Source of the DNA: Macrostomum lignano
Lineage: Eukaryota
Direction of reading: 5' to 3'
NCBI GenBank assembly: GCA_002269645.1
Contig: NIVC01000883.1
Location: 1-24,570, forward strand
DNA length: 24,570 nucleotides
A program made the translations under genes and the position numbers. This document shows positions 2,208-23,437 of the stretch, in pieces. The notes under the pieces were generated by a model. It worked only from the letters and a program-made list of their open reading frames with translations. It had not been told where the DNA came from and did not search any database. Within the stretch, counting starts at the first letter, position 1; each line of letters opens with the position of its first letter.

Positions 2208-12659
<10,452 letters not shown>

Positions 12660-12873
12660 AACTGCAACTAGTGGCCTGCCTGGCGACTCAATTTTCTCAG
12701 TTCTCAAAGTTCTCAGTGCTCTGTTTTAATTTAATATTTGTTCTCAATTCTACGGGCGTAAATAACTTATTTGTTGAACTTTTCAAGATGCTTATTCATA
12801 CACTTCTACGCTCTAAATCTGTTTTTCTATAGCACCTAACATCTTTAATATTTTTTGTGCAAGGCTTTAAGCT

Positions 12874-12984
12874 GCCAATCTTTAACCAATCAGCGTGCTT
12901 CAACTCACGTTTTTAACTAATTATGCGTACACATCTTTACTCAACACTGCTCAGTGCACCCCCAAAAGTCGCATATATATATAT
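12874..12984 (+). promoter_or_regulatory. Candidate Pol II promoter in the direct repeat (two CCAAT boxes plus a TATA-like (AT)6); second copy at about 14203-14313
   Basis: GCCAATC at 12874, AACCAATCAG at 12884-12893 and (AT)6 at 12973-12984, all upstream of the ribozyme. Motif match only. Confidence 0.25.
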
Positions 12985-13032
12985 TGAAATTATGTTACAA
13001 TAACTTCACTGCCAATATATTTGTTTTAAACC

Positions 13033-13088
13033 CGAATAAATAAACCCTGACGAAGGCCCAGTCTGGGCCGAAATATCGGTTTTTTTCG
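13033..13088 (+). ncRNA. Minimal type I hammerhead ribozyme, copy 1; predicted cleavage after C13077
   Basis: Core CUGACGA at 13047-13053 plus one extra A. Stem II GGCCCA/UGGGCC (13055-13069, loop GUC). GAAA at 13070-13073, palindromic AUAU in place of stem III, AUC cleavage triplet. Stem I AAACC/GGUUU with distal CGAA/UUCG. Confidence 0.88.
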
Positions 13089-13153
13089 AACATTCGACAA
13101 CTGGTAACCTTCAATATCTTCCGAGTGCGTGGTTTGCAGTTTCAAACTGCCTT

Positions 13154-14161
13154 ATGAATATCTGTACCCAGGACCGGACTATTATTGAGGCTCGCCATGT
13201 TTGTCAACAAAATATCTTCGTATACGAGCTATTCTCCGCCAAAAATCTACTTGGGATAAGCAAGAGTACTATTTCTGCAGCTGAATATTTAAGACGCACG
13301 ACACTACTACGACTACGGCTACGACTACGACTGTACTACTACTACTCTACTACCACTACTACTACTACTGCAACTACTAGTGCTACTACTACTGAAAATC
13401 TAGCTTCAACTGATCCGCAGTGCCCAGTCGCCTGTGACCAGGGGCTGTGCAGGCGGCGATCTGTGACCAGACGCCGCCAACTGCGACTAGTGGCCTGCCT
13501 GGCTACTTCAAATAACTGCTTACCAGTACGTCTCTACTACGACTACGCCTACGACTGCTCTACTACTACTCTACTAATACTTGTACTACTACTACTTCCA
13601 TTACTACTACTACGAGCTACTACTGCAACTACTAGTGCTACTACTACTGATAATCTAGCTTCAACTGATCCGCAGTGCCCAGTCGCCTGTGACCAGGGGC
13701 TGTGCAGGCGGCGATCTGTGACCAGACGCCGCCAACTGCGACTAGTGGCCTGCCTGGCTACTTCAAATAACTGCTTACCAGTACGTCTCTACTACGACTA
13801 CGCCTACGACTGCTCTACTACTACTCTACTAATACTTGTACTACTACTACTTCCATTACTACTACTACGAGCTACTACTGCAACTACTAGTGCTACTACT
13901 ACTGATAATCTAGCCTCAACTGATCTGCAGTGCCCAGTCGCCTGTGACCAGGGGCTGTGCAGGCGGCGATCTGTGACCAGACGCCGCCAACTGCAACTAG
14001 TGGCCTGCCTGGCGACTCAATTTTCTCAGTTCTCAAAGTTCTCAGTGCTCTGTTTTAATTTAATATTTGTTCTCAATTCTACGGGCGTAAATAACTTATT
14101 TGTTGAACTTTTCAAGATGCTTATTCATACACTTCTACGCTCTAAATCTGTTTTTCTATAG
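13154..14161 (+). CDS. Hypothetical 335-aa ORF inside the element, built largely from the 85-codon tandem unit and Thr/Leu low-complexity sequence
   Basis: True ATG at 13154, lying wholly between the two ribozyme cut sites. No recognisable domain; much of its length is explained by repeats. Confidence 0.15.
   Translation: MNICTQDRTIIEARHVCQQNIFVYELFSAKNLLGISKSTISAAEYLRRTTLLRLRLRLRLYYYYSTTTTTTTATTSATTTENLASTDPQCPVACDQGLCRRRSVTRRRQLRLVACLATSNNCLPVRLYYDYAYDCSTTTLLILVLLLLPLLLLRATTATTSATTTDNLASTDPQCPVACDQGLCRRRSVTRRRQLRLVACLATSNNCLPVRLYYDYAYDCSTTTLLILVLLLLPLLLLRATTATTSATTTDNLASTDLQCPVACDQGLCRRRSVTRRRQLQLVACLATQFSQFSKFSVLCFNLIFVLNSTGVNNLFVELFKMLIHTLLRSKSVFL
13303..13393. repeat. Imperfect (CTA/ACT)n trinucleotide tract
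   Basis: ACTACTACGACTACGGCTACGACTACGACTGTACTACT...; related tracts recur in each 255-bp unit. Confidence 0.85.
13362..14013 (+). repeat. Internal 255-bp tandem repeat, about 2.56 copies
   Basis: GCAACTACTAG at 13370, 13625 and 13880 (spacing 255). Copies are nearly identical. The last 25 bp overlap the start of the right direct repeat. Confidence 0.95.
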
Positions 14162-14488
14162 CACCTAACATCTTTAATATTTTTTGTGCAAGGCTTTAAG
14201 CTGCCAATCTTTAACCAATCAGCGTGCTTCAACTCACGTTTTTAACTAATTATGCGTACACATCTTTACTCAACACTGCTCAGTGCACCCCCAAAAGTCG
14301 CATATATATATATTGAAATTATGTTACAATAACTTCACTGCCAATATATTTGTTTTTAAACCCGAATAAATAAACCCTGACGAAGGCCCAGTCTGGGCCG
14401 AAATATCGGTTTTTTTCGAACATTCGACAACTGGTAACCTTCAATATCTTCCGAGTGCGTGGTTTGCAGTTTCAAACTGCCTTATGAA

Positions 14489-14493
<5 letters not shown>
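13989..14493 (+). repeat. Right direct repeat (pseudo-LTR), 505 bp
   Basis: Copy of 12660-13163. Its last 5 nt (TATCT) are shared with the downstream array. Confidence 0.96.
14363..14418 (+). ncRNA. Minimal type I hammerhead ribozyme, copy 2; predicted cleavage after C14407
   Basis: Identical to 13033-13088 at an offset of +1330. Confidence 0.88.
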
Positions 14494-22844
<8,351 letters not shown>

Positions 22845-23156: not shown

Positions 23157-23157
<1 letters not shown>

Positions 23158-23201
<44 letters not shown>

Positions 23202-23202
23202 C

Positions 23203-23233
<31 letters not shown>

Positions 23234-23248
23234 CACAGACAGACACTA

Positions 23249-23329
<81 letters not shown>
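23158..23329. repeat. (GACA)n microsatellite, about 43 units
   Basis: Direct reading; a few CACA, CTAA and AACA interruptions. Confidence 0.97.
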
Positions 23330-23360: not shown

Positions 23361-23410
23361 GACATAAACAGACATAAACAGACATAAACAGGCATTAACA
23401 GACATAAACA
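23361..23410. repeat. 10-bp tandem repeat GACATAAACA x5
   Basis: Four perfect units and one GGCATTAACA variant. Confidence 0.9.
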
Positions 23411-23437
23411 GATATCGTCTCCTTGCTCACCCCGCAG

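What the first reader, a model, noticed from the sequence alone, without database searches (positions are those of the whole stretch)
12660..14493. Hammerhead-flanked, non-coding retroelement (retrozyme / non-autonomous PLE) embedded in a giant GATA array
Seen: a 1,834-bp insert with direct repeats identical but for 1 nt, two hammerheads exactly 1,330 nt apart, and no RT or endonuclease. Established: PLEs have partial-tandem pseudo-LTRs with minimal type I hammerheads, and metazoan retrozymes are processed by such ribozymes into monomeric linear and circular RNAs of a few hundred nt. Inference: this is a young, unusually large (1.33-kb monomer) member mobilised in trans and possibly specialised for (GATA)n. 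It is the best candidate for an undescribed system in this window.
Basis: partly seen in the sequence, partly recalled or inferred. Interest (0 to 1): 0.88.

Follow-up and report, generated by a model that had tools for sequence, protein, structure and literature searches.

The report
Hammerhead-bearing retroelement targeting GATA repeats
This is a young copy of a flatworm (Macrostomum lignano) mobile element that has no enzymes of its own, carries a minimal hammerhead ribozyme in each terminal repeat, and always lands the same way round in (GATA)n repeats; it is a new family of an already described class, not a new kind of system.

Summary
A 1,834-bp insert (12660-14493) interrupts an 18.8-kb (CTAT)n array. 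Its 504/505-bp terminal direct repeats differ by one T. Two identical hammerhead motifs lie 1,330 nt apart, and there is no RT or endonuclease.

The motif has the 'minimal' type I architecture described for Penelope-like element (PLE) pseudo-LTRs: a 5-bp helix I, a bulged A, a 6-bp helix II and only a palindromic AUAU for helix III. Rfam does not detect it.

The longest ORF matched Macrostomum lignano gene models, which gave five more loci. All six independent insertions lie in (CTAT)n in the same orientation. The five visible 3' junctions are identical (…GAATATCT|ATCT). 5' ends vary, and four of six stop at or in one GC hairpin. Copy number runs from under 1 to about 7 tandem units of 1,330-1,876 bp. 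This is the signature of target-primed reverse transcription.

The fixed 3' end lies 86 nt downstream of the ribozyme cleavage site, so the template RNA was continuous across that site: circular, uncleaved or end-joined. The 335-codon ORF is not kept in an older subfamily.

Verdict: a new (GATA)n-specific, unusually large family of non-autonomous PLE derivatives/retrozymes. No autonomous partner, cleavage or circular RNA was shown.

The parts
2208..12659 (.). Left part of the target (CTAT)n = (GATA)n array
   Evidence: TRF reports period 4 and 5,152 copies over 2208-22843. CTAC-variant doublets with 76+8 nt spacing occur on both sides of the insert, so the array existed before the insertion.
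12660..13163 (+). Upstream pseudo-LTR (504 bp), a 5'-truncated partial extra unit
   Evidence: It is identical to 13989-14493 apart from a 1-nt T indel. Its first base corresponds to the base immediately after GC hairpin copy 3.
13042..13082 (+). Minimal type I hammerhead, copy 1. Helix I AAACC/GGUUU; core CUGACGA; bulged A13054; helix II GGCCCA-GUC-UGGGCC; GAAA; palindromic UA; U16.1 C17. Predicted cleavage between C13077 and G13078.
   Evidence: The MFE of the 66-nt context forms helices I and II exactly (-17.9 kcal/mol, z -2.1). The architecture matches the PLE min-HHR description in PMC4209133.
13136..13163 (+). 3'-terminal module: hairpin GCAGTTT-C-AAACTGC (13136-13150) followed by ...TTATGAATATCT, whose last 5 nt (TATCT) match the target repeat
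   Evidence: All 5 visible 3' junctions fall at this same position, and every internal unit-unit junction is ...GAATATCT|GTACC. In the older relative L022 an A->G change in the hairpin keeps pairing as G.U.
13164..13361 (+). Unique internal segment (198 bp)
   Evidence: 99.5-100% identical in all M. lignano units.
13362..14017 (+). Internal 255-bp tandem repeat, 2.57 copies (13362-13616, 13617-13871, 13872-14017), rich in ACT. Copy number varies between units elsewhere: two, three or four full repeats plus the partial one.
13452..13478 (+). GC hairpin GGCGGCG-ATCTGTGACCAGA-CGCCGCC, copy 1. Copies 2 and 3 are at 13707-13733 and 13962-13988. Preferred 5' end of insertions.
   Evidence: One search gives the coordinates. 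The fold of the surrounding segment has z -2.8. 4 of 6 independent insertions end in it or right after it. It is perfectly conserved three times in the diverged L022 copy.
13989..14493 (+). Downstream pseudo-LTR (505 bp), the 3' end of the full unit
14372..14412 (+). Minimal type I hammerhead, copy 2. Predicted cleavage between C14407 and G14408.
13154..14161 (+). 335-codon ORF (open frame 13040-14158), probably fortuitous
   Evidence: It is the only open frame. It has no Pfam domain and its only relatives are M. lignano gene models. It is not conserved in L022: the repeat period there is 214 nt, all frames are closed and the ATG is lost.
14494..22843 (.). Right part of the target (CTAT)n array

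Best explanation
The insert is a young copy of a non-autonomous retroelement family of the flatworm Macrostomum lignano. It belongs to the hammerhead-bearing Penelope-like-element (PLE) lineage and can equally be called a very large 'non-LTR retrozyme'.

A full unit runs GTACCC...(198-bp unique segment)...(two to four full 255-bp repeats plus a partial one)...(504-bp terminal segment with the hammerhead)...GAATATCT. The window copy is 1.38 units, which is why it appears to have LTRs.

Proposed mechanism:
1. Inferred: an RT/GIY-YIG protein supplied in trans by an autonomous PLE nicks the GATA strand of a (GATA)n array.
2. Shown by the junctions: the ...AGATA-3' end pairs with UAUCU just after the 3' hairpin of the element RNA and primes cDNA synthesis. 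This gives one fixed 3' junction and one orientation.
3. Shown by the copies: synthesis runs on for less than one to about seven unit lengths.
4. Shown for 4 of 6 ends: it tends to stop at a GC-rich hairpin present in every 255-bp repeat. The cause of the stop is inferred.

The priming site lies 86 nt downstream of the predicted ribozyme cut, and every internal hammerhead site is uninterrupted. The template must therefore have been continuous across the cut site. The simplest version is a hammerhead-processed, ligated circular RNA copied by rolling-circle reverse transcription. An uncleaved multimeric transcript, or end-to-end template jumping between cleaved monomers, would give the same DNA.

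After insertion, unequal exchange between the flanking arrays and between the internal repeats duplicates copies and changes unit length.
For: Repeat anatomy and the hammerhead:
-.
- The motif has the traits listed for PLE min-HHRs in PMC4209133: a long helix II, a bulged nucleotide 5' of stem II, a 4-5-bp helix I, and either no helix III or a 2-nt palindromic one that requires dimers.

Host:
- The ORF is 99% identical to an M. lignano protein.

Relatives, in GCA_002269645.1:
- Window, L001, L002, L003, L004 and L022 are six independent insertions.
- All lie in (CTAT)n in the same orientation.
- The 3' junction ...ATATCT|ATCT is identical in the 5 that can be seen.
- 5' ends differ, and unit counts range from 0.8 to 6.9.

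5' ends:
- 4 of 6 fall within a 19-nt stretch at the GC hairpin. When only five insertions were known the binomial P was about 1.6e-5 for 4 of 5, before allowing for post-hoc choice of the stretch.
- The window's end is the first base after the hairpin.

Other points:
- The array is pre-existing: the variant pattern continues across the insert.
- In L022, whose terminal repeat is 9% diverged, all hammerhead core bases, the GC hairpin and the 3' hairpin pairing are kept.
- Duplicated copies with identical 5' junctions in L001 and L003 show later array-level recombination.

Literature:
- PLE microsatellite bias and pseudo-LTRs: PMC8557442.
- Target-primed circRNA model for animal retrozymes: PMC7229834.
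- Retrozymes as PLE derivatives: 10.64898/2026.07.22.740005.
Against: - No autonomous PLE sharing the 3' module was found. The tools cannot search the M. lignano genome at the DNA level, and the roughly 110 kb of M. lignano sequence held contains no RT ORF.
- No Rfam hammerhead model matches, even at E<=10. However, 6 metagenomic hammerheads of the same build with a CAUG-type (CAUG, UAUG or CUAG) loop 3, or none, are also missed.
- Copies are too similar for covariation, and the one helix II change in L022 breaks a pair.
- Minimal PLE hammerheads cleave poorly in vitro (PMC4209133).
- Units within single insertions differ in the number of 255-bp repeats (L001b: 4, 2, 3; L004: one of six spacings is 1,876). 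Simple rolling-circle copying does not predict this unless slippage followed.
- The circular monomer is only modestly structured (48% paired, z -2.65), unlike the highly self-paired small retrozyme circles.
Confidence: 0.7

Rival explanations
1. The element is mobilised by a non-PLE reverse transcriptase, for example a microsatellite-specific LINE that recognises the 3' hairpin and the ATATCT tail. The hammerhead would then be inherited baggage or serve only in RNA processing.
For: The fixed 3' end, 5' truncation and target microhomology fit any target-primed reverse transcription. No PLE partner was found. PMC7229834 leaves 'LINEs or PLEs' open as mobilisers.
Against: Partial-tandem pseudo-LTRs, multimeric insertions and a min-HHR inside the terminal repeat are the PLE signature (PMC4209133, PMC8557442). 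There is no poly(A) or simple-repeat tail generated by the element itself.
Confidence: 0.15
2. It is not a retroelement but a 1.3-1.9-kb satellite that arose once inside a GATA array and spread by unequal crossing-over and segmental duplication.
For: Copies with the same 5' junction are duplicated within L001 and L003. Unit length varies through gain or loss of 255-bp repeats. M. lignano is highly duplicated.
Against: The insertions sit on five different contigs with different unique neighbours: DnaJ and GTPase genes in L002, segment X in L004 and a homeobox exon in L022. Their 5' truncation points differ, yet the 3' junction is identical to the base. An older 80-91% subfamily shows the same junction.
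Confidence: 0.06
3. It is a protein-coding gene family (a Thr/Cys/Leu-rich repeat protein of 273-561 aa, as annotated in M. lignano) that happens to lie in GATA arrays.
For: One + frame is open for 373 codons while the others reach at most 79. The 255-bp repeat is 85 codons, and a 36-bp indel between subfamilies keeps the frame. The frame is intact in about half of the units. GenBank gene models exist.
Against: There is no domain and no homologue outside M. lignano among 1.8 billion cluster representatives. The ACT tracts change phase within the ORF (Leu, Tyr, Thr runs). The 4 variable sites split 1 synonymous to 3 non-synonymous. In the older relative the repeat period is 214 nt, all frames carry 11-16 stops and the ATG is lost. 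P0002 is a chimera of host exons and the element tail.
Confidence: 0.04

Closest known systems
EN+ Penelope-like elements with minimal hammerheads in their pseudo-LTRs (e.g. Cercyon of Schistosoma mansoni, Penelope/Poseidon, Neptune; PMC4209133, PMC8557442)
   Same: Partial-tandem pseudo-LTRs. A min-HHR inside the terminal repeat with a long helix II, a bulged base, a short helix I and a palindromic vestigial helix III. Tandem multimers. Insertion bias for microsatellites. Variable 5' ends.
   Different: No RT/GIY-YIG ORF, so it cannot be autonomous. The target is (GATA)n; the targets reported are (TA)n, (CA)n, (C)n, telomeric repeats and 28S rDNA. No inverted 5'-truncated partner copy was seen. 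The interior is a 255-bp variable tandem repeat.
Animal non-LTR retrozymes (PMC7229834; bioRxiv 10.64898/2026.07.22.740005)
   Same: Non-autonomous tandem repeats, each with one type I hammerhead. Low to moderate GC. Proposed target-primed copying of a circular RNA into tandem cDNA. Now argued to derive from PLE pseudo-LTRs.
   Different: Units are 1,330-1,876 bp, against ~170-400 nt circles and 51-972 bp consensus lengths. The hammerhead is minimal rather than canonical with loop-loop contacts. The monomer is predicted to be only 48% paired. Targeting is strict, to one microsatellite in one orientation.
Plant LTR retrozymes (PMC4918200)
   Same: Non-autonomous, with a hammerhead in each terminal repeat, and a 600-1,000-nt circular RNA intermediate closer in size to this unit.
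   Different: They have type III hammerheads, true LTRs with PBS/PPT and 4-bp TSDs, and are mobilised by Ty3/Gypsy. None of these features is present here.
Microsatellite-specific retrotransposons: Naiad/Hydra PLEs at (TA)n and Chlamys at (CA)n (PMC8557442), and R1-clade LINEs such as Waldo, Mino, Kibi/Koshi and Dong (the LINEs from my own knowledge)
   Same: Orientation-specific insertion into a simple repeat, with microhomology between the RNA 3' end and the target.
   Different: A different repeat, (GATA)n. This element encodes nothing, so the specificity must come from the partner's endonuclease and/or the 5-nt UAUCU match.

Membership tests
Hammerhead ribozyme, type I, minimal (PLE-type) variant | Conserved core CUGANGA ... 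GAAA ... UH with the cleavage site 3' of H17 | tested here: met
   CUGACGA / GAAA / U-C|G at 13047-13077 and 14377-14407. All core bases are also intact in the 9%-diverged L022 copy.
Hammerhead ribozyme, type I, minimal (PLE-type) variant | Helix I (open ends, 4-5 bp) and helix II (6-8 bp hairpin, unpaired base at its 5' side) | tested here: met
   AAACC/GGUUU, and A + GGCCCA-GUC-UGGGCC. Both helices form in the MFE structure. The descriptor matched 0 of 5,000 shuffles.
Hammerhead ribozyme, type I, minimal (PLE-type) variant | Helix III absent, or a short palindrome that can form only between two copies | tested here: met
   A15.1-UA-U16.1 gives the palindrome AUAU. A 2-nt loop cannot close in a monomer. 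The same kind of 2-nt palindromic insertion is described for the D. virilis variant in PMC4209133.
Hammerhead ribozyme, type I, minimal (PLE-type) variant | Covariation supporting the helices | tested here: inconclusive
   Young copies are identical. The only change (L022, G->A) makes a C.A mismatch but leaves a 4-bp helix II.
Hammerhead ribozyme, type I, minimal (PLE-type) variant | Match to a curated covariance model (Rfam hammerhead families) | tested here: not met
   No hit at the gathering score or at E<=10. Six metagenomic HHR-like motifs of the same build are also missed, so the models do not cover this variant.
Hammerhead ribozyme, type I, minimal (PLE-type) variant | Self-cleavage | not testable with these tools
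   Needs in vitro transcription of monomeric and dimeric constructs.
Penelope-like element (autonomous, EN+) | Single ORF with a TERT-like RT and a GIY-YIG endonuclease | tested here: not met
   No RT/EN domain was found in the longest ORF, and no other frame is open for more than 79 codons. At most it is a non-autonomous derivative.
Penelope-like element (structure of insertions) | Partial-tandem pseudo-LTRs, or multimeric tandem copies | tested here: met
   The window copy is 1.38 units. Other loci reach 6.9 units, with precise unit junctions.
Penelope-like element (structure of insertions) | Hammerhead located in the pseudo-LTR near the 3' end | tested here: met
   The cleavage site lies 86 nt from the 3' end of each repeat.
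Penelope-like element (structure of insertions) | Insertion bias for microsatellites | tested here: met
   6 of 6 independent insertions abut (CTAT)n at the 3' side or lie inside it, all in the same orientation.
Penelope-like element (structure of insertions) | Shares its 3' module with an autonomous PLE in the same genome | not testable with these tools
   The M. lignano genome cannot be searched at the DNA level here. No RT ORF is present in the held loci.
Animal non-LTR retrozyme | Tandem repeats, each with one type I HHR, and non-autonomous | tested here: met
Animal non-LTR retrozyme | Small monomer (~150-450 bp; consensus 51-972 bp) with a canonical HHR having loop 1/loop 2 contacts | tested here: not met
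   Units are 1,330-1,876 bp. The motif is minimal and has no defined loop 1.
Animal non-LTR retrozyme | Expressed as linear and circular monomeric RNA | not testable with these tools
   The only indirect hint is that transcript-based gene models overlap copies.

The most novel reading that the evidence does not exclude
The family could be a natural record of rolling-circle, target-primed reverse transcription of a large (1.3-1.9 kb) hammerhead-processed circular RNA by a telomerase-related PLE RT. Priming would occur at an internal UAUCU site by the GATA strand. The same RT might also lengthen (GATA)n arrays by reiterative copying of that site, so that element and giant arrays build each other. 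Less likely, the long ORF might encode a lineage-specific protein.
Probability: 0.12. Interest if true: 0.7.

Novelty: new member of a known kind. Interest (0 to 1): 0.4.

Why it matters
How PLEs and animal retrozymes form tandem or pseudo-LTR insertions, and what their hammerheads are for, are open questions (PMC8557442, PMC7229834). This family gives unusually clean junction data:
- one target repeat and one orientation;
- one 3' junction that lies 86 nt past the ribozyme cut;
- a preferred 5' stop at a conserved hairpin;
- insertions from under 1 to about 7 units.

M. lignano is a transgenic-capable laboratory flatworm, so the circular-RNA versus template-jumping models could be tested there. 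The family also adds (GATA)n to the list of microsatellites targeted by this lineage. It is a practical annotation warning too: GenBank carries at least five 'hypothetical protein' models that are really this repeat.

Tried and rejected
- Rfam at gathering and at E<=10 gave no ribozyme family. The weak DicF, mir-34 and InvR hits are noise.
- An exact 35-nt hammerhead search of JGI metagenomes found 0 hits.
- A relaxed pattern found 17 motifs of the same architecture (L005-L021). They have no RT ORF nearby and no sequence relation to this element, so I used them only as a control for Rfam sensitivity.
- Exact look-ups of the window's 335-aa and 53-aa ORFs found nothing on record.
- I tested the ORF as a real gene and rejected it as unlikely.
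- I tested for a viroid-like rod structure of the circular monomer. It is only 48% paired with z -2.65, so it is not rod-like.
- The 86-nt 3' tail as a whole is not unusually stable (z +0.3).
- An autonomous partner could not be sought. I decided against spending a large protein search on a PLE RT consensus made from memory, because M. lignano hits would be unlikely to surface among all metazoan PLEs.
- Literature searches for Macrostomum with Penelope or hammerhead, and for PLE with GATA, found no prior description. Repbase and Dfam could not be consulted.
- Helitron, DIRS or LTR origins were rejected: no inverted repeats, PBS/PPT or matching ORFs.
Full report
OBSERVATION

The window is dominated by a (CTAT)n array at 2208-22843. 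At 12660-14493 it is interrupted by 1,834 bp of complex sequence. The first 504 bp and the last 505 bp of this insert are direct repeats that differ only by one T in a T run.

The pattern CTGANGA-N(4-30)-GAAA occurs exactly twice in the window, on the + strand at 13047 and 14377, 1,330 nt apart. 0.01 matches are expected by chance.

I wrote a descriptor for the 'minimal hammerhead' of Cervera & de la Pena (PMC4209133). It matched both sites and 0 of 5,000 dinucleotide shuffles of the unit on either strand.

No RT or endonuclease is encoded. The longest ORF has no Pfam domain, and the other frames are closed.

THE HAMMERHEAD

The motif reads AAACC-CUGACGA-A-GGCCCA-GUC-UGGGCC-GAAA-UA-UC|GGUUU, at 13042-13082 and 14372-14412.
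- Helix I (5 bp) and helix II (6 bp) are the MFE structure of the 66-nt context.
- Helix III is reduced to A15.1-UA-U16.1. This cannot close in one molecule, but as the palindrome AUAU it can pair between two copies.

These traits are the ones reported for PLE pseudo-LTR hammerheads: a long helix II, an unpaired base 5' of stem II, a 4-5-bp helix I, and either no helix III or a 2-nt palindromic one. Those hammerheads are thought to act as dimers and cleave poorly in vitro (PMC4209133).

Rfam finds nothing, even at E<=10. A relaxed pattern search of metagenomes retrieved 17 motifs of the same build, most with a palindromic CAUG-type loop 3. I ran six of them through Rfam and all six were missed as well. 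The negative Rfam result therefore reflects model coverage. Predicted cleavage falls after C13077 and after C14407.

ORIGIN AND RELATIVES

The 335-aa ORF (13154-14161) is 99% identical to a Macrostomum lignano 'hypothetical protein'. Cluster members and one distant hit led to five loci of assembly GCA_002269645.1. Mapping the element's segments onto them gave the following.

| Locus | Position | Structure | 5' end |
|---|---|---|---|
| L001 | 5833-12996 | 4 terminal repeats; a shorter duplicate with the same 5' junction at 2458-3520 | repeat position 106 |
| L002 | 15604 to an assembly gap | at least 4 units, period ~1,619 | repeat position 100, after an 8-nt filler |
| L003 | 9760-11340 and 12064-13899 | two copies of the window's own subfamily sharing one 5' junction | terminal-repeat position 255 |
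| L004 | 6449-17732 | 7 terminal repeats; spacings 1,620/1,621 and one of 1,876 | repeat position 116 |
| L022 | 10009-11151 | older relative; 91% identical in the terminal repeat, 76-80% inside | in the ACT-rich tract |

Points common to the loci:
- Every insertion has (CTAT)n at its 3' side, and five also have it at the 5' side.
- All are in the same orientation.
- The 3' junction is identical to the base in the five cases where it can be seen...ATATCT|ATCTATCT.
- Unit-unit junctions are always ...GAATATCT|GTACC.
- Five distinct 5' ends come from the loci above. The sixth is the window's own, at the first base after the third hairpin copy.
- Four of the six 5' ends lie in or immediately after the hairpin GGCGGCG-ATCTGTGACCAGA-CGCCGCC. 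When only five insertions were known the binomial P was about 1.6e-5 for 4 of 5, before correction for post-hoc choice of the stretch.
- A fixed 3' end, variable 5' ends and differing unique neighbours mark independent target-primed reverse transcription events. They do not fit a locally amplified satellite.
- The CTAC-variant pattern of the array continues on both sides of the window's insert, so the array was there first.
- Copies that share a 5' junction within L001 and L003 show that unequal exchange between flanking arrays later duplicates insertions.

MECHANISM

Shown:
- The last five element bases (TATCT) are also the target repeat, so a GATA-strand end ...AGATA-3' can pair with UAUCU and prime.
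- A second ATATCT only 44 nt upstream (13114-13119) is never used. Microhomology alone therefore does not set the start.
- The adjacent hairpin GCAGTTTCAAACTGC is kept in L022 through a G.U-compatible change. It is a plausible RT recognition element (inferred).
- The start site is 86 nt downstream of the ribozyme cut, and every internal hammerhead is uninterrupted.

From the last point it follows that the ribozyme does not create the element's 3' end, and that the template was continuous across the cut.

Inferred:
- The simplest template is a cleaved and ligated 1,330-nt (or longer) circle copied more than once round, as proposed for animal retrozymes (PMC7229834).
- Uncleaved multimeric transcripts, or template jumps between cleaved monomers, would yield the same DNA.
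- Heterogeneous 255-bp repeat numbers within L001 and L004 argue either for later slippage or against a single circle.
- The circular monomer is only modestly structured (48% paired, z -2.65).
- The enzyme source is inferred to be an autonomous PLE. PLE microsatellite bias and variable second-strand cleavage are documented (PMC8557442). I could not search the genome for the partner.

THE ORF

One + frame is open for 373 codons. The other two + frames carry 27 and 37 stops and are open for at most 41 codons, and no frame on either strand exceeds 79. The 255-bp repeat is 85 codons, and a 36-bp indel between subfamilies keeps the frame. I therefore took the ORF seriously.

Against it:
- There is no domain.
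- There is no homologue outside M. lignano among 1.84 billion cluster representatives.
- The ACT tracts shift phase within the ORF.
- The 4 variable sites split 1 synonymous to 3 non-synonymous.
- In L022 the repeat period is 214 nt, all + frames carry 11-16 stops, and the ATG is lost.

The ORF is most likely a by-product, and 'non-coding' stands with that caveat.

COMPARISON AND NOVELTY

The element works like, and is built like, a non-autonomous PLE or animal retrozyme.
- It fails the autonomous-PLE test because it has no RT/EN.
- It lies outside the reported retrozyme size range: 51-972 bp consensus lengths (10.64898/2026.07.22.740005) and ~170-400 nt circles (PMC7229834).
- It carries a minimal rather than a canonical hammerhead.
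- (GATA)n is not among the PLE targets listed in PMC8557442: (TA)n, (CA)n, (C)n, telomeric repeats and 28S rDNA.
- Library searches found no description of hammerheads or PLEs in Macrostomum.

I rate it a new family of a known kind. It is moderately interesting for its clean junction evidence, but it is not an undescribed system.

Noticed in passing
L001:7514-8740: A 1.2-kb non-autonomous DNA transposon is nested in one unit of the element. It has the terminal inverted repeat CAGTGTTGGGCA and the 8-bp target duplication CTTACCAG (hAT-like), so that copy is old enough to have been hit itself.
   Followed up: partly
L004:6070-6448 and L004:18560-18930: The 380 bp of unique sequence just 5' of the 7-unit insertion recurs 100% identical after the 3' (CTAT)n stretch. 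The structure is array-X1-element-array-X1-X2. It is either a ~1.2-kb target duplication or an assembly/recombination product.
   Followed up: partly
L002:15596-15603: An 8-nt filler, TTTAAACC, sits at a 5' junction. It equals element positions 13025-13032, just upstream of the hammerhead, which suggests a short template switch during cDNA completion.
   Followed up: no
L002:10001-16085 (protein P0002, PAA55498.1): This GenBank gene model fuses exons of a host gene to the element's repeat and terminal-repeat sequence as its C-terminus. Together with P0001, P0003, P0004 and P0005, at least five M. lignano 'hypothetical proteins' are this repeat.
   Followed up: partly
window:123-1876: A 22-nt satellite (GTCAGGAACTATAGATTCGGGT, ~80 copies, higher-order period 111) lies directly upstream of the GATA array.
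   Followed up: no
window:23157-24570: (AGAC)n lies at 23157-23329, a 10-nt repeat at 23361-23412, and a 24/48/72-nt minisatellite from 23934 to the window's end. The whole window is tandem-repeat DNA apart from the insert.
   Followed up: no
L005-L021 (JGI metagenome contigs): Seventeen hammerhead-like motifs have the form CUGANGA-U-GGCCC...GGGCC-GAAA-(CAUG/UAUG/CACG)-UC|GG with matching helix I. Most are one repeat family, probably host (eukaryotic) DNA in the samples. Six were run through Rfam and none was detected.
   Followed up: partly
window:12974-12983 and 13035-13040 (also 14303-14312, 14365-14370): A TATATATATA run lies ~65 nt upstream of the hammerhead and an AATAAA 2 nt upstream of it, both inside the terminal repeat. 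They are possible promoter and polyadenylation signals; no insertion carries a poly(A) tail.
   Followed up: no
L022:4673-5035: A homeobox exon (…[25 protein letters not shown]) lies about 5 kb from the old insertion, so that (CTAT)n array sits near a Hox-type gene.
   Followed up: no
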